Virus record (IMG/VR): IMGVR_UViG_3300042562_001598
Location: 124,001 to 188,000 of that record
Length of the DNA stretch: 64,000 nucleotides
Reading direction: 5' to 3' (one strand)
The position numbers were made by a program, and so were the translations under genes. The notes beneath the pieces are model-generated. The model saw only the letters and a list, made by a program, of their open reading frames with translations. It was not told where the DNA came from and did no database searches. Shown here piece by piece: positions 1,081 through 63,832 of this stretch (positions are counted from its first letter, which is position 1; the number at the start of each line of letters is the position of its first letter).

Positions 1081-1854
1081 ATGAATTTACAGGAAAATAT
1101 AGTAAGGATTAGAGAGATGATGCTTGCTGAGGAGATGGTGCAATCTGATGCTTGGAAAATGATTAAGAAATCAATAGATATTCTTAAGAAGAAAGATAAG
1201 GTTTTATTATTGAGTTGTTCCAATAGATACAATTGGAATGAAGAAAACATAGACATTCCAAAGTCAAAGATGATTGCAATGTATATCCAAGATGAGTTGG
1301 GTGATAAGGCGGTCTTAATTGATGTTCCAGAACTTAATATATTACCTTGTGAGGGCAATGTTTCAAGAAAGGATGGTAATAGTTGTGGTTTATTAAAAGC
1401 GTTGCTTAAAGATAAGGATAAGAACCCCTCCGGTAATCATAGATGTTGGGCAAGTTATAACAATCCTAAAGATGAGTTATGGAAAGTATCCAAGGAATTG
1501 TTTGAGTCTGACACTGTAATATTTTTTAGTTCTATAAGATGGGGACAGACTAATATGTATTACCAAAATTTAATTGAGAGGTTAACTTGGATTGAGAATA
1601 GACACGCAACACTTGGTGAATCAAATATAGTTAAGGATATTGAGAGTGGGTTTATTTGTACAGGTCAAAACTGGAATGGTGAGAATGTTACTGGAACTCA
1701 ATTAAAGGTACACGAATTTTATGGGTTTAAACCGAATGATGATTTATATTGGAATTGGCAATACACTAAAGATGTTAATGATGAGACGAAAAAATCTTAT
1801 AAGGAATCACATAAAAAATTCATAAAAGACACGAAGATACCTGAAAATAAATAA
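1081..1854 (+). CDS. Flavodoxin-like / NAD(P)H-dependent FMN reductase-fold protein with N-terminal MNLQENIxRI leader
   Basis: KVLLLSCSNR, LIDVPELNILPCEG, DELWKVSKELFESDTVIFFSSIRWG..YQNLIERL resemble the multimeric flavodoxin/FMN_red pattern. Confidence 0.65.
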   Translation: MNLQENIVRIREMMLAEEMVQSDAWKMIKKSIDILKKKDKVLLLSCSNRYNWNEENIDIPKSKMIAMYIQDELGDKAVLIDVPELNILPCEGNVSRKDGNSCGLLKALLKDKDKNPSGNHRCWASYNNPKDELWKVSKELFESDTVIFFSSIRWGQTNMYYQNLIERLTWIENRHATLGESNIVKDIESGFICTGQNWNGENVTGTQLKVHEFYGFKPNDDLYWNWQYTKDVNDETKKSYKESHKKFIKDTKIPENK

Positions 1855-1872
1855 AAAATTTGTTTTATAATT

Positions 1873-2553
1873 ATGAAATTACAGGAAAATATAGACAGAA
1901 TGAAATCAATGATGGGTTTAATTGGTGAGGGTACGGATAAACTTACCAATAAATTAATTGATAATTTTAGTAAAGAGTTTAATTACACTAGATTAGCTAA
2001 CCCAAATATTGAGAAGTTAAACAATGGGCTTTATTATGTTATGGAATATCGTAAAAATAAAAACACTATTGAAGTGTTGGATAACTATTTCTCCGATGTT
2101 TTTTCAGAATTGCATTTACCTCAAAATGTGTATGAAAAGATTAGAAAAGATTTGATTATTGGTATAATCAAAAACTCCGAAATGGAACCCAATGATGATA
2201 CAATTATATGTGTTAAAGGAAATAGTTTTAATTCTAAATGTTTGGATACATTTTATTATGGTGGTGATGACTTTAATGAAGATGAGGAAAAAAATATTGA
2301 GATAACTTTCAACGCGTTAGATAAAGGCCATTTTTATGTAAATTATCTTGTAAATTATAAATTTGGTTTTATTGAGATTGATGGTTATTTAAAGCCTTAC
2401 AATACAGGTAGAGGTGCTGTTTATGAATTTCATCCTGATATTAATAATGATGATGATGATAATGAAGCTCAAGAATATTATGATGAAAATTATGAAGATA
2501 TTGAACAAGAGATATTGGATGAATTCTATAAAACAAACCCCAGTCAGAAATGA
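1873..2553 (+). CDS. Hypothetical acidic protein with MKLQENIDRMKSMMGL leader
   Basis: 226-aa ORF, leader family, very acidic C-terminus. Confidence 0.7.
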   Translation: MKLQENIDRMKSMMGLIGEGTDKLTNKLIDNFSKEFNYTRLANPNIEKLNNGLYYVMEYRKNKNTIEVLDNYFSDVFSELHLPQNVYEKIRKDLIIGIIKNSEMEPNDDTIICVKGNSFNSKCLDTFYYGGDDFNEDEEKNIEITFNALDKGHFYVNYLVNYKFGFIEIDGYLKPYNTGRGAVYEFHPDINNDDDDNEAQEYYDENYEDIEQEILDEFYKTNPSQK

Positions 2554-2622
2554 TTGGGTTTTTTATTTATAATTCGTTTTATTATGTCTATTATTATCAA
2601 ATAAAAAGTAATTAATAGGTTT

Positions 2623-7872: not shown

Positions 7873-8151
7873 TAAACCAAAAAAAATAAAATTATGTCAA
7901 ATATTTCAATTTTAATTTATTGCATCGCGATTAATTACATTATATTCACAGCAAGTTGTATAATAATGTGTTATGACAAAAAAAGGGATGACTTTTGGAT
8001 GAAAATATCTGTAGTCAGTTTAATGTCCATGATTATAACCTCTTTAATTGGAATTATAGTAGTTTAGAAAATATCCCCAATGTAAATTTATGTTGGGGAT
8101 ATTTATTGTTATAATCTTAAAATAAAATAATTTCGTTATATTTATTAAATT

Positions 8152-21098: not shown

Positions 21099-21135
21099 AA
21101 TTGGGGATAACATATATTTATTATAAAATCGTAAT

Positions 21136-22763
21136 ATGAACTTAAACGAAAACATACAGAGAATAAAACAAATGATGGGGGTCATAACTGAAGATAGGTC
21201 ATCAATAAATGTGTTAAGAAGATTACCAAGGGTTAAAAAATTATTAGATGTGATTTTAGAATATTCACATCCTTGTGATTTTGGTAATGTTCAACATTTT
21301 ATTGATGGAATATTATACGATATTGATACTTTTTTAATTGCGTATGAAATGGAAGGTATGTCTTCAGGTGAGATAAAAGAGTTTATTTCAGAATATTTAA
21401 GTGATGATATTGAGAGATATTATTATGATAGTAAAGAAGATTGTTAATATGAACCTACAAGAAAAGATAAGAACCCTATTAAGGGAACAAAGTGAACAAA
21501 AGGTGGAGATTAAACCACCAATATTCTTTAGAAGAAGAGTAACCCAAGATGAAACGGATAAAAACTTCAGACATAGTGTAGTTTATGTAATCAATAATTT
21601 CCGAAAATATCGCAATTTATTCAACTTTAATGATTATGGTGTTGATAAATTCAAACGCGCCGTCATAATTGTCTTAATAGATGAATATAGTGATATACTA
21701 TCAGATAGTGATGATTTCCCTTATGATGAGATGTATGATTATCTATATAACCATTATGAATCTGAAATGGAAGATAGGTATAATGAACTTGTTAATGATT
21801 TGCAGGAGAACATAAATGAATCAACATTCTTTAAAAGAAGAAGTGATATAGAAAAGATAAAAGATTTATTACCATTATTTGTAGATGATGTTTTCTATGA
21901 GTCTGAAAATTTTGAGGACTTCAAATATCAATTAACAATAAGAGCATTAGAATATTATATATGGTTAACCCATAAGTTATCCTGGGACGAACTACCATAT
22001 GAGGAAGAGACAGATTTTGTTAATCAAATAAGTGAAGTATTAAACGATACAATTAAAGAACTTTACAACACCAAGATTTAATATGAACTTAAACGAAAAC
22101 ATACATAGAATAAAATCAATGATGGGGATTAATGAATCCGAAGAGGAGGTATTTTATATATTTAACCCAAAGGATAATAAAATTATAGGGTTTAATATAA
22201 CATCCGAGGACGAGTTAAATAATTTGTTGTATGATGATAACGGACATAATCTTGGTTATGGGTGGGGATTACAAGTAAATAGATTTGATTCCTTAGATGA
22301 CATTCAACAATGGAACCAAGAAAAAATGGGGGATAGAAATACTAAAGAGACTCAAAACTCAAAATATCCTGATTTAAGTTATATCGCATCAAATTTAAGA
22401 AAAATTGATGGATTAGACTATTACACCATTAACAGAGGTAGTTGTTTCAAGTTCGCAAAAGAAATATCTGAATTAGGTTACAATACATTTACGTTCATAT
22501 TCTCAAATGAAGAACAAGAAGTTATACATGTTTATATAAAACTTAATAACAACTTATATTTTGATGCAACCGGTTTCCATTCTAAAAAAGAAATAAAAGA
22601 CGAATACATTAGTGGGGAAGATAATGATATGTATGATTCAGATATATCAGAATTAGACCACTACTGTAGTTTAGATACATATAATACTCTAACAACAATA
22701 CCAATCTCCAATCAATTATGGAAGAAAGTTGTAAGTGTAATTAAAAAATCCTCATCCAATTAA
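21136..22763 (+). CDS. Three leader-tagged acidic hypothetical proteins (21136..21447, 21449..22081, 22083..22763)
   Basis: MNLNENIxRIKxMMG / MNLQEKIRTLLRE leaders; TATTTAT at 21115. Confidence 0.75.
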
Positions 22764-22779
22764 AAAAGGTGGGGATTTT

Positions 22780-23987: not shown

Positions 23988-24020
23988 TGGTTTTTTTGGG
24001 GAATGGGTATATTTATATAA

Positions 24021-26939: not shown

Positions 26940-27390
26940 CAAAACCCCCAGGTATAAACCAAACTTATATTCATAAAGTTATTAACATGACATATAGTCT
27001 GTTGATAACTTTCCCCCATTGTTAATAACTTCCTATTGTCAGTGCGTCAGGTTCATAACTTGTTAATAACTTCTAACCACCAGGGGAGGGAGCCACTTAA
27101 ATGGTTCATTATTAGGTTGTTATACCGGGCTGCCTGGGGCGTATGGGGGGGCGCTACCTACTGCCCCCGTATCCCCCTTCCTTCCTGCCCCCTGTCAAAG
27201 TGTCAGAAGGGGGGATAATCCCAAGAATGAAGTGTATGGGTAAAAAAAACTTTATAGGAAAATTGTTGGAAAAAGGTAAAATAAATTTCTGGAAAAAATT
27301 GGGGAAATGAGTCCCCCATTTACAGGGGTGGTTTAGAAATGATTTATGTATGTTTTTTCATTTTAGGTTATATTTATTATAAAAAAATAT
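26940..27390. other. Putative replication origin / DNA-handling site
   Basis: Divergent gene orientation; five GTT(A/G/C)ATAACTT-type repeats; GC-rich G/C-run block 27080-27220; A-tracts 27240-27310. Confidence 0.5.
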
Positions 27391-27393
27391 TAT

Positions 27394-27777
27394 ATGAAAA
27401 AAGTTATAACATTAACAGAAAACGATTTGGTTCGTTTAATTAAAAAAGTAATTAGTGAACAAATGAAAGTTGACGATTCAGAAGTTTCTCAATTTATTAA
27501 AACACCCAATAAATTAGTTATTCTTGATTTTACAGCTGAATGGTGTGGTCCTTGTCAAAAGATTAAAAAACATTTTGACGAGATTATTGAAAACCCTAAA
27601 TTGAGTAACAAATTTATTTTAGGTTCTTATGATTTTAGTTTTAGTTCACCGTTAGCGAAGAAATATAATATTCAAGGAATACCTTATGTTATGTTTTTTA
27701 GAAATGGTAAAATGATTCATAAGTTTGTAGGGTATAAAGACAAAGAACATATTGTTTCTTTAATACAGAAACTTTAA
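27394..27777 (+). CDS. trxA: Thioredoxin fused to an MKKVITLTENDL leader
   Basis: LDFTAEWCGPCQ, YNIQGIP. Confidence 0.88.
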   Translation: MKKVITLTENDLVRLIKKVISEQMKVDDSEVSQFIKTPNKLVILDFTAEWCGPCQKIKKHFDEIIENPKLSNKFILGSYDFSFSSPLAKKYNIQGIPYVMFFRNGKMIHKFVGYKDKEHIVSLIQKL

Positions 27778-29640: not shown

Positions 29641-29749
29641 TTATATTGGGGGGAAGATAATTTATTATATACCCCGGACTCGTTCCACTCGCAAAGAATC
29701 CCCGGCCCTTTTTTTGGATATCGGCATATTTATATTAATATAATAGATT

Positions 29750-30571: not shown

Positions 30572-30639
30572 CATTATTTTTATTTGTTTAAGTATCTGAA
30601 CTTTTTTATAAATTGAACATATTTATAATAAAAGCTATT

Positions 30640-31609: not shown

Positions 31610-31638
31610 AATCGTATTTTAATTATAAATATTATGGA

Positions 31639-36472: not shown

Positions 36473-36891
36473 ATGCCGAAAACTAGGTTAATTATCGGAA
36501 AATCAATGAGTGAGGAGTTAATATCTCACATATCTTCAGGTTTTGCTCAATCCGAACATGAAACAATCCGAACCAATGCTAACGATGTAATTTGGGATAA
36601 CATAATTGATTCTGTTTGGGCTGCAACAGATTTTGAGGTTGGCGAGTTAATTTGGAATACATTTAATGTTAAATTATCTTTATCATGAAATTAGGAAAAC
36701 ATGTTTTAGTTCCCAGTTTAACTTATAAACTCCGGGAACCAACTTACACAAAGATTAAAGACAGCGTGGATATATTAATTATAATTTCAACTGAACGGAA
36801 AGTCAGAAATATTATTTTTGATTTTGTGTCAAATTCGGTAACCACACCCATTAAAGTTAATGTTAAAAACAATTATTTTAGGTATTTATAG
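36473..36891 (+). CDS. Two divergent members of the SVxx family (array 4: 36473..36688, 36685..36891)
   Basis: KTRLIIGKSM / MKLGKHV heads; WDNIIDSVW and FVSNSV; TATATTTG at 36445. Confidence 0.6.
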
Positions 36892-36893: not shown

Positions 36894-39323
36894 ATGAAAA
36901 TTATTATCACAGAAAATCAATATGAGTTATTGAAAGATAAACCAAAAGTTTATAACTTTCCATCTTTGGATATATTTGGACATGAAAAACCAATAGATAA
37001 TTGGAATTTGATGCAAAAGTTTTTAGATAAAAAGGGTAATCCTGATTTTACCATTGATGGTAATTTGGATTTAAGGGATGCACCAATTGAATCATTAGGA
37101 AATTTAACTTCGGTTGGGGGGCATTTGGATTTATGTTTTACTCAAATTGAATCATTAGGAAATTTAACTTCGGTTGGGGGTTATTTAAATTTAAGATACA
37201 CACCAATTAAATCATTGGAAAATCTAACATCAGTTGGGGGTACTTTGTTTTTAACAAATTCATCAATTGAATCATTGGGAAATCTAACTTCAGTTGGGGG
37301 TACTTTGAGTTTAGAAGGAACACCAATTAAATCACTAGGAAATCTAACTTCAGTTGGGGGTAGTTTATTTTTAAGAAAAACTCCAATATCCGAAAAATAC
37401 ACTGAAGAAGAAATAAGAAGTCAAGTTAAAGTTGAAGGAGATATATACTTATGAAAATAATAATAACAGAAAATCAATACGAATTATTGAAAGAAATGGA
37501 AGATAAACCAAAGGTTTATCACTTCCCTTCATTGGATATATTTGGACATGAAAAACCAATAGATAATTGGAATTTGATGCAAAAGTTTTTAACTAAAAAA
37601 GGTAACCCTGATTTTACTATCACAGGTGATTTGGATTTAAGTGACACCCTCATTGAATCATTGGGAAATCTAATTTCGGTTGGGGGTACTTTGTATTTAA
37701 TGGGAACACAAATTAAATCATTGGGAAAACTAACTTCAGTTGGGGGTGGTTTGTTTTTAGAGTATTCATCAATTGAATCATTGGGAAATCTAACAACAGT
37801 TGGGGGTGCTTTGAGTTTAGAAGGAACACCAATTAAATCATTGGGAAATCTTAAATCGGTTGGGGGTAGTTTGTATTTAAAAAGTTCACCAATTAAATCA
37901 TTGGGAGAACTAACATCAGTTGGGGGTAATATATATTTAACTGATACATCAATTAAATCATTGGGAAATCTAACTTCGGTTGGTGGTAGTTTGTTTTTAA
38001 GAAGAACACCAATATCAAAAAATTACACTGAAGAAGAAATAAGAAGTCAAGTTAACGTTGAAGGAAAAATATACTTATGAAAATAATAATTACAGAAAAT
38101 CAATATGAGTTATTGAAAGAAACCAAAGATAAACCAAAAGTTTATAACTTTCCATCGTTGGATATATTTGGTTATGAAAAACCAATAGACAATTGGAATT
38201 TGATGCAAAAGTTTTTAGCTAAAAAAGGTAATCCTGATTTTACCATTGATGGTAATTTGGATTTAAGTGATACTCTAATTGAATCATTAGGAAATTTAAC
38301 TTCGGTTGGGAATAATTTGTATTTATCATACACACCAATTAAATCATTAGGAAATCTAACTTCAGTTGGGGGTGATTTGAGTTTAGGAGGAACACCAATT
38401 AAATCATTGGGAAATCTTAAATCGGTTGGTGGTTATTTGGATTTAAGAGATACATCAATCGAATCATTGGGAAATCTAACTTCGGTTGGGGGTACTTTGC
38501 ATTTAAATGAAACGCAAATTGAATCACTGGGAAATCTAACAACAGTTGGTGGTAATTTGGATTTAGAAGATACAACAATTGAATCGTTTGAAAATCTTAC
38601 TTCGGTTGGTGGTAGTTTGTTTTTAAGAAGAACACCAATATCCGAAAAATACACTGAAGAAGAAATAAGAAGTCAAGTTAAAGTTGAAGGAAAAATATAC
38701 TTATGAAAATTATTATCACAGAAAATCAATACGAATTATTGAAAGATAAACCAAAAGTTTATCACTTCCCTTCATTGGATATATTTGGTCATAAAAAACC
38801 TATAGATAATTGGAATTTGATGCAAAAGTTTTTAGATAAAAAAGGAAACCCAGATTTTACTATCACAGGTGATTTGGATTTAAGTGACACCCCCATTGAA
38901 TCATTGGGAAATCTAATTTCGGTTGGTGATAATTTGTATTTATCATACACACCAATTAAATCATTAGGAAATCTTACTTCGGTTGGGGGTGGTTTGGATT
39001 TAAGAAATACACCAATTGAATCATTGGGAAATCTAACTTCGGTGGGAGGTAATTTGTATTTAACATACTCAAAAATTGAATCATTGGGTAATCTTACTTC
39101 GGTTGGGGGCGATTTGGATTTAGATGATACACCGATTAAATCAATAGCTAATCTAACTTCAGTTGGGGGTAGTTTGTTTTTATATAATACACCAATTGAA
39201 TCATTAGGAAAACTAAAATCGGTTGGGGGTAGTTTGTTTTTATATAATACACCAATATCCGAAAAATACACAAAAGAAGAAATAAAAAGTCAGGTTAAAG
39301 TTGAAGGAGGTCTATACTTATGA
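36894..39323 (+). CDS. Four tandem LRR-like proteins (36894..37454, 37451..38080, 38077..38706, 38703..39323) with MKIIITENQ leader
   Basis: 5-6 copies each of the 20-aa unit xLxLxxTPIxSLGNLTSVGG (60-bp DNA repeat); conserved N- and C-caps. Confidence 0.88.
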
Positions 39324-39628
39324 AAATAATAATTACAGAAAATAGAATATTCAGTGTTGCTAAAAAACAACTGACTAAAAAGTTTGGTGATTTAACGCCT
39401 TTTACCTATGATGAGGAAGATGATATCGTTTATTATATTAATAATAAACGAGCACTTTATTTTGAATATGATAAAGAAGAAAATTATTGCCGAATTGGTG
39501 ATACTATTTGGGATTTCTTAACAGATATCTTTGGCTTAGATGATGACCAAATAAAAAAAGTTACAAAAGAATGGTTGGAAGACTATTATAATCTTAAGGA
39601 TGTTTCAGTATTAAAATCAGAGTGGTAA
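39320..39628 (+). CDS. Leader-tagged hypothetical protein, paralog of 63494..63832
   Basis: MKIIITENRxxSVAKKxLTKxFGDLTP and DIFGxDxDQI shared. Confidence 0.8.
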   Translation: MKIIITENRIFSVAKKQLTKKFGDLTPFTYDEEDDIVYYINNKRALYFEYDKEENYCRIGDTIWDFLTDIFGLDDDQIKKVTKEWLEDYYNLKDVSVLKSEW

Positions 39629-39912: not shown

Positions 39913-39983
39913 CTTGGAGGGTTTTTTATTATTACACTATAAATTTTAGTGAAAATTACCTATATTTACCATATTTATATAGT

Positions 39984-41475
39984 ATGAACGCAAAACTTAA
40001 CGAAAAGCTAAAAAAGTTAGTAGAGGAAAAAGGTTATAGAGAAGCTTGTGAATTGATATCACTAAAGATGTATGATTTGGCAACATTAACTGACTTAAAA
40101 ATAGAAGGTGAATTTGCTCAAGGTATATTATTTGATTTATTGGATGATAATAAAATTCCAACCACTTATGAGGATTTCAACATTAAAACAAGAGATATTG
40201 AAGATATAATAATATGGGAAAATGATTCTGTTGCCGCGGAGGCAATGCCATTTTATAAACCCAACCAATTAAATGTTTGGATGTTTATCTATACCAATGA
40301 AAATGACGATGAGAAATATTTCCATGGTGAAATTCCGAACTCTTATATAATGTCAAAGTGTAAAGGTAGTTTTGATAATCTTGAAGAATTTATTACTTGG
40401 ATTAAAGATTATTATTACCCAACATCAGCAAAAATGATTGCAGAATTAATATCATTAAATAATGATTCAACAAAATAACTAAAGTATGACCCCAAAAGCA
40501 AAAGAAAAAATACAACAATTGGTTGATAAAATAGGATTTCATAGGACATGTGAAAATTTACATATGAAATCATATGATTTAGTTAGACTATTTGGTGTGA
40601 AGATTAATAACTCAGAAGTATGTAATAATTTAGTATTTGATTTATATACAGATTCTCTTTTACCAACAACATATAAAGAATTTACCCTTTATATTGATGA
40701 TGAAGGTATTTTATCTTGGATTTCCACAGATGCCGAAGTTTGGGCAACACCTTATTGGAATTGTGAAAATGAACTACCAATAGATATAGTTCATTATAAA
40801 CGCTATAATGAAGATAATATAGATTACGAATACTTATCAGATAATTTTAAGTTAAAACCGGAGTTTACCGATATTACAGAGTTCATTCAATATCTTAAAG
40901 ATTTTACATATCCAGAGACATATAAAAAAATTCACAGGTTAATAGATAGAATTGAAGAATATGAAAATAATTTATAAAATAACCACAGGATGAACCCAAA
41001 AGCAAAAGAAAAAATATTAAAATTAATAGAAAGAGAAGGATTTGATGGAGTTCTTGATAGCCTACAACTAAAAGCGTATGACTTAGTTGAAAAGTTTGAC
41101 CTTGAAATTAATAATCCTGATATGTGTTGGACTTTAATTTATGATTTATATAAAGATAATAAATTACCCAGTCAATATAAAGAATTTACTATTGAACTTG
41201 ATAATGATGGTTTTTTAGGTTGGGAGGATGTTTCAACGAATACTCTTTTTTACGCAACACCTTTCTGGGATGCTGAAAGTAATTTACCTATAAATATAGT
41301 AACTCATAAAGAATATGATGAAAGAGACTTACCGGATGAATTAAGGTATATTTATATTCAAATACCTTATGAATTTAATAATCTTGAAGAATTTATTACT
41401 TGGTTAAGAGATTTTTATTATCCAACAACTTATAAAGTAATTAAAGATATAACTAATAGAATTGACCAAGCATGA
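39984..41475 (+). CDS. Three tandem paralogous acidic proteins (39984..40478, 40486..40977, 40990..41475)
   Basis: Shared EKxxxLxxxxG, YDL, DLxxDxxxPxxYxxF, AxP(F/Y) and EFIxxxxDxxYP motifs. Confidence 0.82.
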
Positions 41476-42256
41476 AAATAATAATTACAGAGAATAAATT
41501 ATATAACTCAATATACAACTATATTGATAAATTTTACGATACATCTAAAATAGGTCAATTCAACCCAACAACTGATGACGAAATTGGGAATTGGGGTGAT
41601 AAGGAAAATCCGTATATTACAGAGTTTTATTACTATATATTTGATGGAGATTATGATGAAAACGGGGTAGCGTTTTTATATATTCAAAAAGAATATTATG
41701 ACGAGAAACACTCAAATATGTCATTTATAAATCAATCACCAATATTAATTGTTAATAATTATGGCGATTTTACAGAAATGTTTAGTGATTATTGGAAAGA
41801 ACCAATGAAACAATGGTTTTGGGATAAATATAAACTACCGGTTAAAACGATAGTTGCTGATTAATAAAATAAAATATGAAAATAATAATCACAGAAAATA
41901 AGCTAAACACCTCATTTGAGAAAATGCTTAATAGGGAATTGAAACACCTAAAAGAATATAAGGAATCCGACGATTTTGACGAAGAAAGTCTCCCAGATAA
42001 TATTTCTTGGGATACAATGAATTGGATTGAATATGTTGATAAAATTGAGGTTGTTCAAGTTGATAAAGAAACTAACCCAAATCCAGAATTTAGTTCTTTT
42101 AATGTTCTAATTAATGTTTATACAAGTTATTTAACTAATTTTGATGTTGAAAGTATTATTTCAGACCTTGAAGATAATATTAACGAAACTTTACAATATA
42201 ATGTAAGTTTAATTGAAAACGATGTAATAAATAACGGAACAACAACTGAATGGTAA
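41472..42256 (+). CDS. Two MKIIITENK-leader acidic proteins (41472..41864, 41876..42256)
   Basis: Leader family. Confidence 0.75.
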
Positions 42257-42257: not shown

Positions 42258-42707
42258 ATGAAAATAATAATTACAGAAAATCAATATACATTATTGAAAG
42301 AAATGGAAGATAACCCAAAAGTTTATAACTTCCCATCATTGGATGTTTTCGGTAACGAAGAACCAATAGATAATTGGAATTTGATGCAAAGTTTTTTAGA
42401 GAAAAAAGGTAACCCAGATTTTTCTATTAGTGGTAATTTGGATTTAAGAGATACACCAATTGAATCACTAGGAAATCTTACTTCGGTTGGGGGTTATTTA
42501 AATCTATATGGTACACCAATTGAATCATTAGGTAATCTAACTTCAGTTGGGGGTAGTTTGATTTTATCACGAACACCAATTGAATCATTGGAAAATCTAA
42601 CTTCGGTTGGGGGGTTTTTAATTTTACGAAATACACCAATATCAGAAAAATACACAGAAAAAGAAATAAGAAGTCAGGTTGAAGTTAAAGGAAATATACA
42701 CTTATGA
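42258..42707 (+). CDS. Fifth LRR-like protein (3 repeats) with MKIIITENQ leader
   Basis: Same caps and 20-aa unit as 36894-39323. Confidence 0.88.
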   Translation: MKIIITENQYTLLKEMEDNPKVYNFPSLDVFGNEEPIDNWNLMQSFLEKKGNPDFSISGNLDLRDTPIESLGNLTSVGGYLNLYGTPIESLGNLTSVGGSLILSRTPIESLENLTSVGGFLILRNTPISEKYTEKEIRSQVEVKGNIHL

Positions 42708-43231
42708 GAATAATAATTACAGAAAATCAAAGAACCCAAATGTTAAATAAAATTTGGGACAAATTAAAAGCAAACGGAAAACAACCAACACTAAACCGTG
42801 AGGTTCTAAACTCTTTAGGTTTTAATACTTGGGATTCCGAACCAAGATTTGCATTAACACATTACCTTGGCGGTTATGATAAAGTAAAGGAAGATGCTAA
42901 AAATTTAGTATTAGGAAAAACCTTTAATACCGATGACTATGATGGAACTGGTAGTTATAGTTTTACTTTTACAGTTGAAGATGTATGGGAAGAAAATGAA
43001 GAAGAACAAGCAATCCAATTTATAGTAAAATTTGGTAACGGAACTGTTGATTGGTATGATGAAGATGGTGAAGAAATTGGTCCAACAGATATTTTAGATG
43101 CTTATTCACAAGCGGATATGACTGAAAGTTGGGAATTTAAGTCTGAAATACAAGATGTTATTAAAATGATTTTAGAACAAGAAGTAACCAACAAAACCGG
43201 AATTGATGTTGAAGTTGAATTATTATGGTAA
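42704..43231 (+). CDS. Leader-tagged acidic hypothetical protein
   Basis: MRIIITENQ start. Confidence 0.75.
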   Translation: MRIIITENQRTQMLNKIWDKLKANGKQPTLNREVLNSLGFNTWDSEPRFALTHYLGGYDKVKEDAKNLVLGKTFNTDDYDGTGSYSFTFTVEDVWEENEEEQAIQFIVKFGNGTVDWYDEDGEEIGPTDILDAYSQADMTESWEFKSEIQDVIKMILEQEVTNKTGIDVEVELLW

Positions 43232-49012: not shown

Positions 49013-49558
49013 GGTTAACTTAAGGGTTTTTCTTTTTAAAAAGTTTTTCATTGTATTTATTATAACACATCACTTAAATATGAAAAAATTTTTAATTACG
49101 GAATCAGAAAAAAAAACTATAAGACAATTATATGGACTAAGTGAACAACAAACAGCTCCGGAATCATCTGTAGACACTACAACAACAGCAATACCACCTA
49201 AACAACAAATGGGGTCAACTCCTGAACAAAGAGCTGCAGCTAAAGAGAGAAATAGGTTAAGATTAGCACCTATTGAAACGGCTCAAAAAACAAAGATACA
49301 AAATTGGATTGATTGTAATAGTAAACCGGGGAGTACACCTTTAACTACTGCTGATTATTGGAAATGGCAAGAAAAAAGAAACAAAGGTAATGATGCTGAC
49401 CCATATGGTGGACAATTAAATACTTCCTCAGCAAACAAAAGAGGAGAAACAAAAGGAAGTTGTAATGCTGATGGTTCGGCCGGAGACACCAAAAAAGGTG
49501 AATCGTTGCAAGATATAAAATAAGAAAAAAACCCTTAAGATTAACTTAAGGGTTTTTT
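49001..49558 (+). repeat. Duplicated terminator flanking 49080..49523
   Basis: aaaaacccttaag(g/a)ttaacttaagggttttt at 49001 and about 49527. Confidence 0.88.
49080..49523 (+). CDS. Leader-tagged hypothetical protein
   Basis: MKKFLITESEKKTIRQLYGLSEQ; TATTTAT at 49054. Confidence 0.72.
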   Translation: MKKFLITESEKKTIRQLYGLSEQQTAPESSVDTTTTAIPPKQQMGSTPEQRAAAKERNRLRLAPIETAQKTKIQNWIDCNSKPGSTPLTTADYWKWQEKRNKGNDADPYGGQLNTSSANKRGETKGSCNADGSAGDTKKGESLQDIK

Positions 49559-51144: not shown

Positions 51145-53773
51145 TTAATTTTTTTCAATAGTCAAATTAGTTTCTAAAATATCTAACGATGTTACTATTG
51201 AGATATCCGAATCAATCCCCATATATTTCCAAGCTTCACCTATAATATACTGGAGACCATAAGGATAACTTTCTTCACATAATTCAACATCATCACTATA
51301 TAATGTGCAATTAATTACAAATAATTTTGCGTTGGTTGAATACTTTATTGGACCATTTACCTTAATAAAACTGCTATTCCCAAATAATAGGAGTAACTCT
51401 TCTTTAAGAAGACCATTAATTAATAACTCAAAACCTTTTTTCATTCCAAAAAAATAGTTATATTTACAATAAAAATCAAATCATGGGAAAGTTAATTATA
51501 ACCGAACAGGAAAGACAAGATATATTGGGTAAGTATAATGATGAGAATACCAATAAAGAGGTTCTTGTTTATTTACGCAGACATTTTACGACACATACTT
51601 ATCCTGGAGTTCCTGACCAAGTAATGATATCTATCAATGATAAATTATATCCGGTGTATTCTAATAAAAAATATGTTAAAAATAGAATATACAATATAGT
51701 TAAGGAAGTCTTTGATAACTTGGATGAAGCGATTATAAAAAAAACAATTAAAAATTATTTAGATTATTTGTAAAAATAGTTATCTTTGTAAAAAAATATG
51801 GAAACAAAAATGAAATACTTGTGCGGATTAATAGTTGTTAGTTTATTAACATTCACTTCTTGTAAAAAAGATGAAATATCTTCATCAATAGAAGGTAACG
51901 GATTTAAAGTTGAATTTTTATTTGAGAAGGATGGTATAAAAGTGTATCGTTTTATTGATGGTAGTAGTACTCATTATTTTACTTCTAGAGGTGAAACAAT
52001 TAGTTCCCAACAGCATGGGAAAACCAGTTATGATGAAAATATAAATTAAGATAAAAATGATAGACTTTACCAAATATTCAGTAGAAGAATTAAGAGAACT
52101 TCAAAATAGTATTGGAACTTATCTTACTAACATAAATGATGGGTTTATATATATCTGTGAGGTTAGGTCATATGGTAGCAGTTGGGTATTAAACTTTACC
52201 AATGAACTTTCGGTGAATGATTTATGTGTGACTTATGATGGACAAGATGGAATTGTGGATGTATATACCACAAATCCAAATGCTAAAATTAACAACTATG
52301 GCGGTGAGGTTAATTATATTGAATCACAAATGAATTATGATAGATGGAAAAAAGCCAACGATTTGGTTCATACTATAAGAAAAGCTGAAGATGATATAAA
52401 AAGATGGGAAGATAGAGATAATATCCCTTTTCATTCAAGACCATCGTTTGAACCAGTATGGTCTGAAGAAGATGTTGTTGGAATGAAAAAAGTGTTGGAA
52501 GAAATTGGTGAATATGAAAACCCTACACCAATAAATGTTAATAGTTATGATGAAGAATACTAAAATAAAATAGATATGACACTAAAAGATAAGTTACAAG
52601 TTGAGATAATGGATTTACCAATTATGGATGAGGTAATTGATGACATTGGAACTAATTTAGAATATGTTGCTGATAATTTTGCTAAAGAAGTTTTGAGAAC
52701 TTATATAAGTAACAAAACTTTACAATATAAACAAAGTCAAGGAGATTATAGTTTAGATGAATTACTACTAATTATTAAAAAAGAAAAAGGATTATGACAA
52801 TATTCAACGATGAAGATAAAAAAATAGGAATTATTGAGAAAATTTCACTTTGGTATAGATTTGATGGTAGACACATTCCAAGGAATATTATGGAAGGTAT
52901 TAAAAATATCATCTATTGGTTTCCTATTATTTGGAAAGATAGAAATTGGGACCAATCATTCATTTATGAAGTGTTGAAACATAAACTAAAAGCTCAAGCT
53001 AACTATATTGATACTAAAGATAGACACACTAGAGCTAAACAAGATGCTCGTAGAATGAGATTATGTGTTAGTTTAATACAGATATGTCAAGACGATACTT
53101 ACAATACGGAATATATGGATTACGCCGAAACCGACTTTTGGTTTGAGGATGTTGAGGATAAACCTGGATATTCAACCATAAAGAGTGACATCATTTGGGA
53201 GAAATATGATGATTACTTCAAGAAATATCCGTTAATTTATAAGAGAGTGATGAATGGTGAAGGTGTGTTTAGTCTTGAGGGTAGAGACGACGATAAACAA
53301 GTTATTGCAATGAACATCGGACACATCAACCAAGACAGAGCACATAAGCTTTTGTTTAAAATACTGGAATCTAATATAAATTCTTGGTGGGATTAGACTA
53401 TTTATAATAAAAAATAGTTATGATTACCAGATTAAAGAAAAATATTTACTTAACAATATACGGGGTCTCACTCTTAACATTAATAATGATATGGAGTGGA
53501 CCCCAATTATTTACACCGGTTGAAACTTATAAAACAACAATTAAAGAAGAACCGGAATTACCTATCGTATATGTTGATTCAGCATCATCTGGACCGGTAG
53601 AACAACTCCCAAGAAGTGTTAAACCTGAACCAGTCGTTGAACCAAAGGTTACACAGATAGAACCACCCCTATCAATCTTTTCATTTATAAAAGAAATAAC
53701 ATCTTCAATAATCGCAATAGGTAATATAATCCTATTATTTTATCAAATTAGAGATAAAAAAAAGACCACATAA
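51145..53773. CDS. Hypothetical genes: 51145..51444 (-); 51483 (leader-tagged), 51798 (lipoprotein), 52057, 52576, 52794, 53420 (+)
   Basis: ORF track; FTSC lipobox in 51798; MGKLIITEQER leader in 51483. Confidence 0.65.
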
Positions 53774-55561: not shown

Positions 55562-55866
55562 AATATTTAGTTTAACTATAAATATTATGTTATACTATTT
55601 TTTTGGTTAGTTTTCTACTTGTTACAGGTTTGGGTGTAGAGCGTGGGTTCTTTGATTTTATTTCAACCTCGTAAGGACCGGTCTTATTTTTGGATAAGTC
55701 GTATCTCCAAATGATTGTTTCATCAACATCATCGTAGATTTTTTCCCATTTGGTATCACCAATGTTTTTATTATCTTTTTTCATAATGTAAAAATATTAA
55801 AATCTTTTTGGATAATCAAATGTTTTTTTTGTATATTTGTTGAGTAGAATTAAAGCAATAGAAATT

Positions 55867-58181: not shown

Positions 58182-58217
58182 ATTTATTATCTTCAATATT
58201 TATTAATAAAATCACAA

Positions 58218-58571
58218 ATGAAAATAATTATCACCGAAGAACAATACAAACATTTTAATATTGTTAAAAAATCAGATTTAGAGGATTCCGGAACTTGGTC
58301 TGCGGATGTATTAACACATAAAAGTGAAGGTAAAAATATATATACTTATAGTGATGGTGTTTTTACAAAAAGAGAAAAAAAACCATTGGAAAGAGGTGTC
58401 ACTCGTCACGGGGGTAGTAGAACCGAAGTTTTTTATCTATCTGATGAACAAGCGGAACAGGCAAATGATTTAATTAGACAGTCTCGTGAGTTAGAACAAC
58501 AGGCGAAAGAATTACGTCAACAAGCCAAAGAAGTTATACAACAAGAATTTCATTTACCACAAAAACGATAA
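58218..58571 (+). CDS. Leader-tagged hypothetical protein
   Basis: MKIIITEEQY; TATTTAT at 58197. Confidence 0.75.
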   Translation: MKIIITEEQYKHFNIVKKSDLEDSGTWSADVLTHKSEGKNIYTYSDGVFTKREKKPLERGVTRHGGSRTEVFYLSDEQAEQANDLIRQSRELEQQAKELRQQAKEVIQQEFHLPQKR

Positions 58572-60553: not shown

Positions 60554-61312
60554 TTATTTTTCTTTAAGTAATACCAAACATCTTTTTAGATATTCTTTAG
60601 CTCTTGGAGATGGAGTATACTCATCTTCTTTTGTTTGTAAAGCCAATACTTTTTCAATATCTTTTACAAGTTCAGTTCCGTGTTCATTTTCTTTATAAAG
60701 TTCAATTACTTTATCCATAGCTTTATGACACTCATTTGATGTTTCATCAAAGTAATTTTTACCTCTATACTTATTCAAGTTATTAAGCATTTCGTAAGCT
60801 AAATGAGCTCCACCATCGTTAACATCCTTAAATAATCTCAATCCGTTTAAGATACCTAAAGTATCAACCATTGAGTTAACACCATTTCTTCTTTTCTTAA
60901 CACCTGGAGTATAGTGGTGAAAATCATCAGCTTTACCAGTAATTTCTTCTAGTGGCATAACATTAGATGTTAAACAATGATTTTTCTTTTCTTCTTTAAC
61001 TTCTGGTTGTGCTTGTTCCAGGATATGTTTTCTAATAGATTGACGAAGTAATTTTTCGTCTATAATAACTCTTTTCATATAATACTTTTTTTATAAATAT
61101 CACTTATTTGGTAATTGTTCATCATCTTCATATTTTGTTGAAGTTAATGTTAATGTAACCCAAACATCAAATACTAAAAAATATATCCACCAGGTTAAAT
61201 TGGATAATGGAAATTCATCTGGGTATAACCCATTCATGGTGAATAGATAAATAATTTTTATCATTATTATAAATTTCAATAATGATGTGATAACTTTAAA
61301 TGCTTCTTTCAT
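60554..61312 (-). CDS. Leader-tagged hypothetical protein (60554..61078) and a small membrane protein (61100..61312)
   Basis: MKRVIIDEKLLRQSIRKHILEQ; TATTTAT at 61093-61099 (-). Confidence 0.7.
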
Positions 61313-62188: not shown

Positions 62189-62242
62189 ATCGTCTTTTTT
62201 TACAAAGATAATCATATTTATATTATAAAAGAAACAATTTTT

Positions 62243-63481
62243 ATGAAATTAGTTGAAAATATTAAAATATCAAAAGAATTACAATATCATATTGATAATA
62301 ACCTACCATTAAACGAGAATGTATTCAGACCAAACTCTGAAAAATATTTCCAATTGTTTAATGAAGTTAGAGAATTATTTAACGATGATAAAATTAGATT
62401 GACCGAGGATGATATATTTTTGGTTGAAAGTGATTTGGGTAAAAAAGTAAAACTATCCAATGGTCAGACCGTATGGCTGGATGCCCCAATTGAGGAAGAA
62501 TTAATTTCGGAAACAATAAAATTGGATATTAAAGTTGGCGATACTTTAATGGGTGGAAAATTTAAGAATAAAAAAGTTGTTGTAAAAACAATTGATAAAA
62601 ATGAAAAGGGGGATATTACAATCAACGGAAAACCATTATTGAGGTTTAGAATGATTAATGAAGTTAGAGTTCCAAGGGACGAAAGAGTTGAATTATATAG
62701 AGACGATAATATCCTTGTTATTGTTCCATTAACTCATAGAGCTTTAAGAAAATATGCAAACTCCTGTCAGTGGTGTATTAATTCAGATGTTTCAGAATGG
62801 GAAGATTATCATAAAGGATTACACACAATTATCCTTCAAAGAAACCCTAAAGAAGTAAAAACCGGAATAACAGGAAATCCAACCGCTAGTGAAATATTAA
62901 TGGGTCAAAGATGGGGTGAAGGTTATACTTTTGATGATATTCAAGATATTTTAGGATATGAATTTGAGAACGAACAACAAGCGGAAGAATATTTAATATC
63001 ACTAACTAAAGATATTGATAATTTCGCAACTAATGCTGTTTATTATTCACCTGGTTATGGAATTTATGATATGGAAGATAATCATATGGGTGATTATCAT
63101 TATGAAATTACCGATATACCAAATGTAACACCTGAAATTGTTAAACTAATTGATGAATACCTTGTTAATGAAGAAGTATTATCTGAAGCCGAATATAAAG
63201 GTAAAAATGTGGAACTAAACAAACCTACTAGAAGTTCTGGACCTAAAAAATATCAGGTATATGTTAAAAACCCATCAACCGGAAATATTAAAAAAGTAAG
63301 TTTTGGTGATGCAAAGGGGGGATTAACCGCTAAAGTATCAAACCCTAAAGCAAGAAAAGCATTTGCTGCTCGTCATAATTGTAAAGATAAAAAAGATAAA
63401 ACTAAAGCCGGATACTGGGCTTGTAGAGCAAATAGGTTCGCTAATCTGTGGGGTGGTAAAACTTATCCAGGGTTTTGGTAA
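62243..63481 (+). CDS. Multi-module protein with basic C-terminal module
   Basis: C-terminal ELNKP..KKYQVYVK..KVSFGD..RKAFAARHNC..AGYWAC; modules separated by (L/I)xE. Confidence 0.7.
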   Translation: MKLVENIKISKELQYHIDNNLPLNENVFRPNSEKYFQLFNEVRELFNDDKIRLTEDDIFLVESDLGKKVKLSNGQTVWLDAPIEEELISETIKLDIKVGDTLMGGKFKNKKVVVKTIDKNEKGDITINGKPLLRFRMINEVRVPRDERVELYRDDNILVIVPLTHRALRKYANSCQWCINSDVSEWEDYHKGLHTIILQRNPKEVKTGITGNPTASEILMGQRWGEGYTFDDIQDILGYEFENEQQAEEYLISLTKDIDNFATNAVYYSPGYGIYDMEDNHMGDYHYEITDIPNVTPEIVKLIDEYLVNEEVLSEAEYKGKNVELNKPTRSSGPKKYQVYVKNPSTGNIKKVSFGDAKGGLTAKVSNPKARKAFAARHNCKDKKDKTKAGYWACRANRFANLWGGKTYPGFW

Positions 63482-63493
63482 AATAAATAAGAT

Positions 63494-63832
63494 ATGAAAA
63501 TTATAATTACAGAAAATAGGGTATTAAGTGTTGCGAAAAAAGAGCTAACTAAACACTTTGGTGATTTGACACCTGTTGAGGATAAAAGAAACCCTAATGT
63601 TGTTTTTTATACTGATAAAAACCGAAAAATTTATATTCAGTATATTGCACACTTCAAGAAAGCCGGTGTTAATGAAATTTATTCATTTTTAGAAGACATA
63701 TTTGGTTTTGATGAAGACCAAATAAATGAAATTATGACGGAATGGTTTCAAGAACAATATGGTTTAGATGTAAAAAGAACCATTCAGGCCAGTCGTGAAT
63801 TTTGGGGTTGGGATGGTATAACAAATAATTAA
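63494..63832 (+). CDS. Leader-tagged hypothetical protein, paralog of 39320..39628
   Basis: MKIIITENRVLSVAKK. Confidence 0.8.
   Translation: MKIIITENRVLSVAKKELTKHFGDLTPVEDKRNPNVVFYTDKNRKIYIQYIAHFKKAGVNEIYSFLEDIFGFDEDQINEIMTEWFQEQYGLDVKRTIQASREFWGWDGITNN

What the first reader, a model, noticed from the sequence alone, without database searches (positions are those of the whole stretch)
1081..63832. Shared N-terminal leader on more than 20 unrelated proteins: candidate capsid-targeting/protease-processing tag for injected cargo
Seen: three related leader styles. MKIIITE(N/E)x: 29750, 36894, 37451, 38077, 38703, 39320, 41472, 41876, 42258, 42704, 49080, 51483, 58218, 63494. MKKVIxLTExDL..IxE: 27394, 28366, 28719, 31609(-), 61078(-). 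MxLxENIxRxxxMM..xxE: 1081, 1873, 21136, 21449, 22083, and more loosely 8152. They are fused to unrelated bodies (thioredoxin, flavodoxin-like, muramidase, LRRs, acidic proteins). Their operons are preceded by TATTTAT rather than the host-type promoter box. Established: T4 internal proteins carry a 10-aa capsid-targeting sequence removed by the prohead protease after (I/L)xE. Inference: a greatly expanded late-expressed packaging tag that lets the phage load and inject an interchangeable protein arsenal.
Basis: partly seen in the sequence, partly recalled or inferred. Interest (0 to 1): 0.85.

Follow-up and report, generated by a model that had tools for sequence, protein, structure and literature searches.

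The report
Shared head-targeting leaders on phage proteins
A 282-kb uncultured T4-related jumbo phage puts a few near-identical short N-terminal peptides on dozens of otherwise unrelated late proteins; these peptides are most likely tags that load the proteins into the phage head for injection, a much enlarged version of the T4 internal-protein system.

Summary
The window holds 23 robust leader genes: 14 'MKIIITE', 4 'MKKVIRLTESDLxRIVRRVIKE' and 5 'MNLxENIxRIKxMMG'. Two more are loose (61078-, 8152). Their bodies fall into about 18 unrelated families.

Profiles built only from other contigs recover exactly these genes. The core motifs occur only at N-termini. Codons vary almost freely while the peptide is nearly invariant, so the peptide is what is conserved.

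In public viral contigs the 22-residue leader sits on at least 118 unrelated bodies. Conservation stops abruptly after an invariant I-x-E.

Every leader gene with its own upstream region follows a (T)ATATTTAT box. In this same phage that box precedes the portal, a gp21-type (Peptidase_S77) prohead protease and the scaffold/Gp23 capsid operon. I found this head module about 36-45 kb right of the window.

Cargo domains include thioredoxin, lysozymes, LysM, Tae4, an ADP-ribosyltransferase, a sigma factor and phosphatases.

Best reading: T4-style capsid-targeting propeptides, greatly expanded and in several classes. Packaging, cleavage and injection remain untested. I class it as a new variant of a known kind.

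The parts
29750..30061 (+). A-leader gene (MKIIITERQ), 103 aa, own P2 box
36894..37454 (+). A-leader gene, LRR-like paralogue 1 of 5 (MKIIITENQYELLK)
37451..38080 (+). A-leader gene, LRR-like paralogue
38077..38706 (+). A-leader gene, LRR-like paralogue
38703..39323 (+). A-leader gene, LRR-like paralogue
39320..39628 (+). A-leader gene (MKIIITENRIFSVAKK), paralogue of 63494
41472..41864 (+). A-leader gene, 130 aa, unique body
41876..42256 (+). A-leader gene, 126 aa, unique body
42258..42707 (+). A-leader gene, LRR-like paralogue
42704..43231 (+). A-leader gene (MRIIITENQ), 175 aa, unique body
49080..49523 (+). A2-leader gene (MKKFLITESEKKTIRQLYG), own P2-like box at 49054-49060
51483..51773 (+). 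A2-leader gene (MGKLIITEQERQDILGKY), P2-like box TATTTAC at 51461-51467
58218..58571 (+). A-leader gene (MKIIITEEQ), own P2 box
63494..63832 (+). A-leader gene, second gene of the P2-led unit that starts at 62243
27394..27777 (+). B-leader gene: 22-aa leader + thioredoxin (PF00085, residues 25-126), own P2 box
28366..28617 (+). B-leader gene, 83 aa, own P2 box
28719..29027 (+). B-leader gene, 102 aa; orthologues elsewhere carry either the B leader or the 'MNRSYSKIRHIQESN' leader
31184..31609 (-). B-leader gene + DUF5872 body, own P2 box
60554..61078 (-). loose B-like leader (MKRVIIDEKLLRQSIRKHILEQ), own P2 box; not recovered by the leader profile
1081..1854 (+). C-leader gene; body has a flavodoxin-like fold; orthologues (75-83% identity) lie beside the head module in related jumbo contigs
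1873..2553 (+). C-leader gene, 226 aa
21136..21447 (+). C-leader gene, 103 aa, own P2 box
21449..22081 (+). C-leader gene (MNLQEKIRTLLREQ), weaker match; start taken at an internal ATG 2 nt after the stop of the upstream gene
22083..22763 (+). C-leader gene, 226 aa
8152..9198 (+). loosely leader-like N-terminus; weak peptidoglycan-binding match; two P2 boxes upstream
8138..8145 (+). P2 box ATATTTAT, 7 nt before the ATG of 8152
21114..21121 (+). P2 box heading the unit 21136-21449-22083
27370..27377 (+). P2 box before 27394
28330..28337 (+). P2 box before 28366
28682..28689 (+). P2 box before 28719
29726..29733 (+). P2 box before 29750
31625..31632 (-). P2 box before 31609(-)
36883..36889 (+). 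TATTTAT 4 nt before the ATG of 36894, first gene of the LRR-like A-leader array
39971..39978 (+). P2 box heading the unit 39984...41472-41876-42258-42704
58196..58203 (+). P2 box before 58218
61093..61100 (-). P2 box before 61078(-)
62214..62221 (+). P2 box heading the unit 62243-63494
124..143 (+). two P2 boxes (124-131, 136-143) heading the unit 148-611-1081-1873
30619..30626 (+). P2 box before endonuclease VII (30640-31083); a non-leader gene of late function under the same box
55578..55585 (-). P2 box before the GH19 + peptidoglycan-binding lysin (54770-55561, -); a non-leader gene of late function under the same box

Best explanation
The leaders are modular N-terminal virion-targeting propeptides of a T4-superfamily jumbo phage that probably infects a Bacteroidota host.

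Proposed mechanism:
- Leader genes are transcribed late from the same (T)ATATTTAT promoters as the head-assembly genes.
- The short N-terminal peptide is a hydrophobic strand (KIII / KVIRL), then T-E-(S/N)-(D/Q), then an amphipathic helix. It docks the protein onto the assembling scaffold core of the prohead.
- The gp21-family (Peptidase_S77) prohead protease then cuts after the conserved (I/L)-x-E: residue 7 in class A, residue 22 in class B, about residue 17-19 in class C.
- The freed body stays in the head and enters the next host cell with the DNA.

Shown here: the leaders exist, are conserved at the peptide level, are modular and are strictly N-terminal. They are tied to the head-gene promoter box. 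The same phage encodes the S77 protease, T4-type portal, scaffold-like protein and Gp23 capsid protein.

Inferred only: docking, cleavage, residence in the capsid and injection.
For: 1. Modularity.
- The B leader sits on 118 BLAST-unrelated bodies, A1 on 52, A2 on 17 and C on 18, in about 2.5 Mb of related loci.
- B-leader information content is about 3 bits per position over residues 1-22. It falls to 1.2, then 0.5, then below 0.4 immediately after E22.
- Relative to the proposed cut, the third residue before it is I/L/V in 116/118, the second is variable, and the residue at the cut is E in 114/118.
- In T4, gp21 cuts after L/I-x-E, and the processing determinants of the 10-residue targeting sequence are residues 8 and 10 (PMC9026906).

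2. Peptide-level selection. Synonymous-codon entropy inside the leaders is 76% (B) and 92% (A1) of the genome-wide value.

3. Leader swapping. Orthologues of the 28719 body carry either the B leader or 'MNRSYSKIRHIQESNQRLE'. Both keep 'RRV(I/L)KE' directly before the body.

4. Machinery in the same phage.
- Exact-protein look-ups were tiled with 10.5-12.8 kb overlaps at 99.94-100% nucleotide identity.
- They reach Terminase_6N, Portal_T4, Peptidase_S77, a scaffold-like protein and Gp23 at window-equivalent 100.1-109.5 kb.
- The capsid protein starts MGALLESGLVGNIGLKHLKVIKE|D. The scaffold-like protein has ...ELVKESLxE|Q followed by an acidic tract. The protease has an N-proximal L-I-E, like the LIE near the N-terminus of T4 gp21 (PMC9026906).

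5. Late co-regulation. See the promoter counts. Across the 138.6-kb tile, none of 30 leader genes shows a host-type box alone.

6. Position.
- Leader genes are inserted between protease and scaffold (L016), between the 150-aa gene and the protease (L160), and between the 241-aa and 150-aa genes (L197, L199).
- Orthologues of 1081, together with A-leader and B-like genes, form a late operon with a baseplate-hub-like gene next to the capsid gene in jumbo relatives.

7. Cargo.
- Peptidoglycan-acting domains occur without signal peptides: PG_binding_1 x3, Phage_lysozyme x2, LysM, Hydrolase_2, Tae4.
- Other domains are ART-PolyVal, an ECF-type sigma-70, dual-specificity phosphatases and thioredoxin.
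- T4 Alt, an ADP-ribosyltransferase, is loaded and cleaved in the same way (PMC9026906).

8. Internal controls in the same phage.
- A leaderless thioredoxin lies downstream of a gene with a host-type box, while the B-leader thioredoxin follows a P2 box.
- A YkuD_2 protein has a signal peptide and a host-type box, while an A2-leader Tlde1/YkuD protein follows a P2 box.

9. Structure. In the AlphaFold model of 1081 the leader is a separate helix (residues 3-16), joined to the body by a low-confidence break (17-21).
Against: - No virion proteome, N-terminal sequencing or expression data exist for this uncultured phage.
- (I/L)-x-E is a short motif and is common in Ile/Leu/Glu/Lys-rich proteins of an AT-rich genome.
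- In class A, conservation continues past E7 (N/S, Q, then L/I at position 13). The peptide is therefore more than a minimal cleavage site, and the cut could lie elsewhere or not happen at all.
- The leaders are not detectably similar to anything in 50,697 deposited phage genomes, T-even phages included.
- Leader bodies are mostly acidic: median pI 4.7, 16 of 23 below 6. The T4 review describes the internal proteins as basic.
- The number is very large: 30 strict hits in 138.6 kb. It is not obvious that all could be packaged in useful amounts.
- In relatives some leader genes sit in an operon with a baseplate-hub-like gene. The destination could be another part of the virion.
Confidence: 0.58

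Rival explanations
1. The leader is a late-protein tag with a different destination or partner. It could be an anchoring or oligomerisation helix that attaches proteins to the tail or baseplate, to a phage chaperone or to the inner membrane. It would not be removed by the prohead protease and the proteins would not sit inside the capsid.
For: - In jumbo relatives, C-, A- and B-like leader genes lie in a P2-led operon that starts with a baseplate-hub-like gene.
- Class A conservation extends beyond the putative cut.
- The B leader is an amphipathic helix.
- Acidic bodies suit a DNA-filled capsid poorly.
Against: - Conservation ends sharply at an invariant Glu with the I-x-E pattern.
- The same ...VIKE and ...SLxE endings occur at the N-termini of the capsid and scaffold-like proteins.
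- Leader genes are inserted next to the protease and scaffold genes.
- Leader classes swap in front of a kept RRVxKE.
Confidence: 0.2
2. The leader is an N-terminal degradation tag that marks proteins for timed removal by the phage-encoded ClpP (43273-44007, minus strand) working with a Clp ATPase.
For: - The window encodes a cellular-type ClpP (PF00574, 3e-51) directly next to the largest A-leader cluster.
- The same phage encodes a ClpB/AAA-type ATPase further right.
- 'Met-basic-hydrophobic x3' resembles an N-terminal ClpX recognition motif. This is my recollection of published ClpX motifs and was not tested.
Against: - The ClpP gene has no P2 box.
- A degron does not explain the tie to the head-gene promoter, the insertions in head operons, the I-x-E boundary or the peptidoglycan-acting cargo without signal peptides.
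Confidence: 0.06
3. The conservation acts on nucleic acid. The first codons would be a translation-initiation enhancer for short-leader or leaderless late mRNAs in a host without Shine-Dalgarno use, or a recombination junction for shuffling gene cassettes.
For: - There is no Shine-Dalgarno sequence.
- The P2 box ends only 4-6 nt or 12-19 nt before the ATG, so 5' untranslated regions are very short.
- The first codons are slightly biased towards A-rich synonyms.
- Leader swapping needs recombination at or near the leader.
Against: - Synonymous sites vary at 76-92% of the genome-wide codon entropy while the amino acids are nearly invariant for up to 22 codons.
- Head genes under the same promoter do not carry these codons.
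Confidence: 0.04
4. The proteins are one diverged paralogous family and the 'leader' is simply its best-conserved segment.
For: Some leader genes are true paralogues: five LRR-like genes, and the pair 39320 / 63494.
Against: - The bodies include unrelated Pfam folds: thioredoxin, lysozyme, LysM, sigma-70, Tae4, DSPc, DUF2237 and DUF5872.
- Conservation drops to background within two residues of the leader end.
- The same body occurs with different leaders, and the same fold occurs without any leader.
Confidence: 0.03

Closest known systems
[quoted passage not shown]
   Same: - A short N-terminal peptide is the only thing shared by otherwise unrelated, non-essential proteins.
- It ends in (L/I)-x-E.
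- The genome encodes a gp21-family protease, a Gp23 capsid protein, a T4-type portal and a scaffold.
- The cargo includes an ADP-ribosyltransferase, as Alt is.
- The genes sit in variable regions.
   Different: - There is no sequence similarity to anything in deposited phage genomes, T-even phages included.
- There are at least four or five leader classes rather than one.
- Leader length is 7-22 aa.
- Numbers are far higher: at least 30 genes in 138.6 kb and more than 200 body families across the lineage, against 3-4 genes per T-even phage and about 10 internal proteins known.
- Bodies are mostly acidic, and many act on peptidoglycan.
- Packaging and cleavage are not demonstrated.
Propeptides of head, inner-body and ejection proteins in phiKZ, 201phi2-1 and SPN3US giant phages (PMC9026906, PMC5694885, PMC10052503)
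   Same: - These are jumbo phages that package dozens of proteins.
- A diverged gp21-like protease cleaves after Glu in a short motif.
   Different: - As I recall, the cleavage motif in those phages is S/A/G-x-E, and their propeptides are long and not a shared near-identical tag. I did not test either point here.
- The protease and capsid protein here score directly as Pfam Peptidase_S77 and Gp23.
Phage P1 Dar anti-restriction proteins loaded into the capsid (PMC9024508, PMC12810830; the detail on N-terminal targeting is from my own knowledge)
   Same: Anti-defence cargo is carried in the head and injected, with an N-terminal region sufficient for loading.
   Different: - P1 loading depends on a hierarchy of specific partner proteins (Hdf, DarA).
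- There is no common short tag across many cargo proteins.
Encapsulin cargo-loading peptides (my own knowledge)
   Same: A short conserved peptide, joined by a flexible linker, directs unrelated enzymes into an HK97-fold shell.
   Different: - The encapsulin peptide is usually C-terminal and is not cleaved.
- There is no portal, DNA or injection.
- This phage system is not a member of that family.
Polymorphic toxins and T6SS/T7SS effectors with shared N-terminal trafficking modules (my own knowledge)
   Same: - A conserved N-terminal delivery module is combined with interchangeable C-terminal effector domains.
- Domains are shared with those systems: Tae4, Tlde1 and ART-PolyVal.
   Different: The delivery vehicle would be a phage capsid, and the module is only 7-22 residues long.

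Membership tests
T4-type capsid-targeting sequence / internal-protein system | A short peptide at the extreme N-terminus shared by otherwise unrelated proteins | tested here: met
   The motifs occur only at N-termini. Leader classes sit on 118, 52, 17 and 18 unrelated bodies.
T4-type capsid-targeting sequence / internal-protein system | The leader ends in the gp21 cleavage motif (L/I)-x-E | tested here: met
   In the B leader the third residue before the proposed cut is I/L/V in 116/118, the second is variable, and the residue at the cut is E in 114/118. All 25 window leaders have [IL]xE ending at residues 5-9, and the B and most C leaders have a second one ending at residues 17-22 (13 in 21449). 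This is a sequence motif only.
T4-type capsid-targeting sequence / internal-protein system | The same genome encodes a gp21-family prohead protease, a Gp23 capsid protein, a portal and a scaffold core | tested here: met
   PF03420, PF07068, PF07230 and PF03237 were found at window-equivalent 100.1-109.5 kb, through a tiling path with 99.94-100% identical overlaps.
T4-type capsid-targeting sequence / internal-protein system | Expression together with head-assembly genes (late) | tested here: inconclusive
   The promoter-like box is shared with the portal, protease and scaffold genes in this phage and in relatives. No expression data exist.
T4-type capsid-targeting sequence / internal-protein system | Proteins are present in the capsid, the leader is removed by the protease, and the proteins are injected | not testable with these tools
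   The phage is uncultured and no proteomic data are available.
T4-type capsid-targeting sequence / internal-protein system | Sequence relatedness to the T-even leader | tested here: not met
   tblastn of the B leader against 50,697 phage records found nothing. The A and C leaders were not searched in that way because they are shorter than the tool's minimum.
phiKZ-like propeptide / inner-body system | Cleavage motif S/A/G-x-E and phiKZ-type core genes | tested here: not met
   The residue three before the proposed cut is I/L/V, not S/A/G. The nearest capsid-protein relatives are T4-type.
ClpXP N-terminal degron | Recognition by ClpX and degradation by ClpP | not testable with these tools
   ClpP is present in the window. 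No binding or stability data exist.
Sec/Tat or lipoprotein signal peptide | A hydrophobic core of 10 or more residues followed by a signal-peptidase site | tested here: not met
   The leaders are charged amphipathic peptides. Real signal peptides are seen on other genes of this phage, for example the YkuD_2 protein starting MKLITLLLVITTSLYGQ.

The most novel reading that the evidence does not exclude
An abundant, uncultured lineage of roughly 280-330 kb freshwater T4-superfamily phages uses a small 'address code' of interchangeable N-terminal peptides (classes A, A2, B, C, D and more). With it they load tens of different effectors per genome into the virion, drawn from more than 200 cargo families. 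The effectors include cell-wall enzymes, an ADP-ribosyltransferase, a sigma factor, phosphatases and redox proteins. Different classes would specify different sites, copy numbers or release order. That would make the capsid a programmable multi-effector injection device on the scale of a secretion system.
Probability: 0.3. Interest if true: 0.9.

Novelty: new variant of a known kind. Interest (0 to 1): 0.72.

Why it matters
If the tags work as proposed, reading N-termini alone would list the whole injected-protein repertoire of a very common environmental phage group. The group has 544 and 551 confirmed relatives of two prohead-protease variants in IMG/VR.

That list would be a ready catalogue of candidate host-takeover and anti-defence proteins, most of them of unknown fold. 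It would also extend the T4 capsid-targeting principle from a handful of proteins to a multi-class system.

The 7-22-residue peptides could be tried as packaging tags for protein delivery by phage capsids.

The result also defines the late promoter box (T)ATATTTAT for this lineage. It gives paired natural controls in which the same fold occurs with and without a leader.

Tried and rejected
- Megablast of 8 kb of the window against deposited phages found nothing.
- tblastn of the B leader against deposited phages found nothing.
- A full-text search for the leader strings gave only chance hits. Three topic searches found no description of this leader system.
- Cluster look-up gave no names or accessions.
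- Two protease-based scans of IMG/VR returned only the best 80 loci of 551 and 544 relatives, and neither list held the window's contig.
- I looked for synteny with other jumbo contigs to guess where the head module lies. It gave no usable anchor.
- Walking 28 kb to the left found more leader genes but no head genes. Walking right found the head module.
- Most bodies have no Pfam or PHROG match. The PDB sequence search for 1081 was empty.
- I could not find which of the 60 scanned proteins carry the ART-PolyVal and sigma-70 domains.
- There are no tRNAs and no Rfam families in the window.
- Rejected: RNA-level conservation, a single paralogous family and a signal peptide.

Full report
**What the window is.** The window is 30% G+C and densely packed with short, co-directional genes that have no Shine-Dalgarno sequences. 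It corresponds to positions 124,001-188,000 of a 282,192-bp viral contig, IMGVR_UViG_3300042562_001598, also held as JGI Ga0453062_0000006.
- It encodes three C5 DNA methylases (one split by an intein), N6/N4 methylases, thymidylate synthase, a cellular-type ClpP, endonuclease VII and a GH19 lysin with a peptidoglycan-binding domain.
- Host-type upstream boxes of the form TAnnTTTG are present. As far as I know this is the Bacteroidota -7 promoter element.
- Some N-termini look like Bacteroidota lipoprotein signals, and the nearest cultured capsid-protein relatives include Flavobacterium phages. All this points to a Bacteroidota host, which is an inference.

**Checking the observation.**
- I built profile HMMs of the three leader styles only from other contigs and scanned all 462 candidate ATG starts in the window.
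- They recovered all 14 A-type starts, four B-type starts and five C-type starts. They did not recover 61078(-) or 8152, which are only loosely similar.
- In the six-frame translation the core motifs occur only within seven residues of an initiator Met: 14/14, 4/4 and 4/4.
- With 25 N-terminal residues removed, BLAST at 1e-3 joins only the five LRR-like genes and the pair 39320/63494. That leaves about 18 unrelated bodies.
- Thioredoxin is solid (PF00085, residues 25-126, so the leader lies outside the domain), and 31609(-) is DUF5872.
- The LRR assignment is sub-threshold.
- The body of 1081 models as an alpha/beta fold whose best PDB matches are FMN-dependent quinone reductases and WrbA (E = 6e-4, TM 0.44-0.5, mean pLDDT 65.6).
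- A muramidase is not demonstrated.

**The leader is a widespread, modular peptide.**
- A search of the large protein database with the 102-aa protein 28719 returned dozens of proteins that match only over the first 22-25 residues, at 80-95% identity, with unrelated sequence afterwards.
- A degenerate DNA pattern for the B leader hit 70 stretches of IMG/VR contigs.
- In about 2.5 Mb of fetched loci the B leader sits on 118 BLAST-unrelated bodies, A1 on 52, A2 (MKKFIITEEEKxxILGxY) on 17 and C on 18.
- Further styles exist, such as MNRSYSKIRHIQESN and MKNLFNDISQEEKNRILEMH.
- For B, information content is about 3 bits per position across residues 1-22. It falls to 1.2, then 0.5, then below 0.4 immediately after E22.
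- The last three leader positions are I/L/V (116/118), a variable residue, and E (114/118).
- Synonymous-codon entropy inside the leaders is 76% (B) and 92% (A1) of the genome-wide value, so selection acts on the peptide and not on RNA or DNA.
- Orthologues of the 28719 body carry either the B leader or the MNRSYS leader. Both keep RRV(I/L)KE directly in front of the body.

**Two promoter-like classes.** The most enriched 7-mers in upstream regions are ATATTTA/TATTTAT ('P2') and TATTTGT/ATATTTG (host-type TAnnTTTG).
- ATATTTAT occurs 26 times, 20 of them in the 9.6% of the window that is non-coding, and 5-30 nt before start codons.
- Of 50 genes with their own upstream region, 9/9 leader genes carry P2 against 8/41 others (Fisher p = 1e-5).
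- The other leader genes lie downstream in units that a P2 box heads.
- Non-leader genes under P2 include endonuclease VII (phrog_2633, 1e-33) and the GH19 lysin, both classical late functions.

**Head machinery in relatives.**
- Loci fetched through the leaders contain T4-type head modules: large terminase, portal, a 241-aa gene, a 150-aa gene, Peptidase_S77 protease (PF03420, 1.9e-23), a 71-aa gene, a scaffold-like acidic protein and a Gp23 capsid protein (PF07068, 1.9e-73).
- This protease family is very common in IMG/VR. Two variants gave 551 and 544 confirmed relatives, several on contigs of 286-334 kb.
- The TATTTAY box lies within 60 nt upstream of the scaffold gene in 56/58 distinct upstream sequences, the protease in 62/63, the portal in 32/39 and the 241-aa gene in 58/58. 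It is found in 0/59 and 1/58 for two internal genes of the operon.
- Leader genes are sometimes inserted inside this operon (L016, L160, L197, L199).
- In jumbo relatives, orthologues of window gene 1081 (75-83% identical), an A-leader gene and a B-like gene form a late operon with a baseplate-hub-like gene next to the capsid gene.

**Head machinery in the same phage.** I walked along the window's own phage with exact-protein look-ups.
- Consecutive loci overlap by 10.5-12.8 kb at 99.94-100% nucleotide identity. Each queried protein is also carried by contigs in the 0.2-1 Mb size class.
- To the right lie 13 tRNA genes, a T4-type RNA ligase, SmpB and more leader genes.
- Then come, in window-equivalent coordinates: Terminase_6N at about 100.1 kb, Portal_T4 at about 101.9 kb, Peptidase_S77 at 105,163-105,897, the scaffold-like gene at 106,264-107,631 and Gp23 at 107,663-109,507.
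- The portal, the 239-aa and 156-aa genes, the protease and the scaffold gene each have the box AATATTTAT(T/A)A. This is the same sequence as in front of leader genes 58218 and 31609(-).
- The capsid protein begins MGALLESGLVGNIGLKHLKVIKE|D. The scaffold-like protein has ...ELVKESLTE|Q followed by an acidic tract. The protease has an N-proximal L-I-E, comparable to the LIE near the N-terminus of T4 gp21 (PMC9026906).
- Over the 138.6-kb tile there are 30 leader genes at profile E <= 1e-3, and none shows a host-type box alone.

**Cargo.**
- Sixty of the largest leader proteins from related loci were scanned. All have clear leaders.
- They matched PG_binding_1 (3), Phage_lysozyme (2), LysM, Hydrolase_2, Tae4, ART-PolyVal, sigma-70 regions 2 and 4 (ECF type), DSPc/Y_phosphatase3/Tc-R-P, DUF2237, L5 gp82, DUF5872 and LRR.
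- Peptidoglycan-acting domains behind a charged, non-secretory N-terminus make sense if they reach the periplasm from the virion.
- An ADP-ribosyltransferase recalls T4 Alt, which is loaded into the core and processed by gp21 (PMC9026906).
- The same phage offers natural controls. A leaderless thioredoxin lies downstream of a gene with a host-type box, while the B-leader thioredoxin follows P2. A YkuD_2 protein has a signal peptide and a host-type box, while an A2-leader Tlde1/YkuD protein follows P2.

**Interpretation.** In T4, internal proteins and Alt share only a short N-terminal capsid-targeting sequence.
- That sequence binds them to the scaffold core and is removed by gp21 after L/I-x-E. 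Its first ten residues suffice to load foreign proteins. T-even phages carry variable sets of such proteins, which inhibit host restriction (PMC9026906, PMC3012670, PMC12373910).
- The system here has the same logic and the same machinery families. It differs in several ways:
  - The leader sequences are unrelated to anything in deposited phage genomes.
  - There are several classes, 7 to 22 residues long.
  - Gene numbers are an order of magnitude higher.
  - Bodies are mostly acidic.
- I therefore read it as a new, expanded variant of the T4 kind, with confidence about 0.58. Docking, cleavage, capsid residence and injection are all inferred.

**Rivals.**
- A late tag for another virion site or partner, about 0.2. 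Support comes from the hub-linked operon and from class A conservation extending beyond E7.
- A ClpP degron, about 0.06.
- Conservation at the nucleic-acid level, about 0.04. This is contradicted.
- A single paralogous family, about 0.03. This is contradicted.

**Novelty.** I found no description of these leaders in the literature library, by sequence string or by topic. No deposited phage carries the B leader. The lineage itself appears to be uncultured but very common in metagenomes.

Noticed in passing
window 9772-13395 (+), 24197-26412 (-), 31639-35671 (-): Three tandem arrays hold about 43-50 small ORFs of 52-95 aa. Each starts MKTK(I/V)xLGKSV (variant MKEVI(T/S)PRIxLGKSV), continues with 4-residue 'xSVx' repeats and ends in NSI, NRL or FRL. 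Neighbouring genes overlap by ATGA. 29 of them link by BLAST. The antisense ORFs 26564-26776 and 32855-33172 are mirror artefacts of the repeats. The function is unknown.
   Followed up: partly
window 43273-44007 (-): A cellular-type ClpP protease (PF00574, 3e-51). Its best tblastn matches are huge uncultured phages (LR745206, 60% identity) and Lak megaphages (43%). It has no P2 box.
   Followed up: partly
window 5195-7123 (+): A C5 cytosine methylase is interrupted by an intein with Hint, intein-splicing and LAGLIDADG matches. Two further C5 methylases lie at 2623-4311 and 4314-5192.
   Followed up: no
window 46045-47292 (+): The thymidylate synthase is 415 aa and its Pfam match is split into two stretches. 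This suggests an in-frame insertion.
   Followed up: no
L358:3918-4232 against window 27394-27777; L362:20039-20545 against L362:18781-19599: The same phage encodes matched pairs of one fold with and without a leader. A leaderless thioredoxin lies downstream of a gene with a host-type box, against the B-leader thioredoxin under P2. A signal-peptide YkuD_2 protein under a host-type box stands against an A2-leader Tlde1/YkuD protein under P2.
   Followed up: partly
L360:7972-15538 (about 18-25 kb right of the window end): A cluster of 13 tRNA genes. It is followed by a T4-type RNA ligase 1 (PF09511), SmpB and a ClpB-like AAA ATPase in the same phage.
   Followed up: partly
Some of these genes also have a P2 box directly upstream.
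   Followed up: partly
leader genes in loci L001-L271: The distance from the end of the TATTTAY box to the ATG has two modes, 4-6 nt and 12-19 nt. If the box is a -10-like element, the first mode implies leaderless or nearly leaderless late mRNAs.
   Followed up: no
window 22763-24197 and 26776-27394: These stretches have no convincing ORFs and a somewhat higher G+C content (0.35 in the 24-28 kb bin). There is no Rfam match and no tRNA.
   Followed up: no
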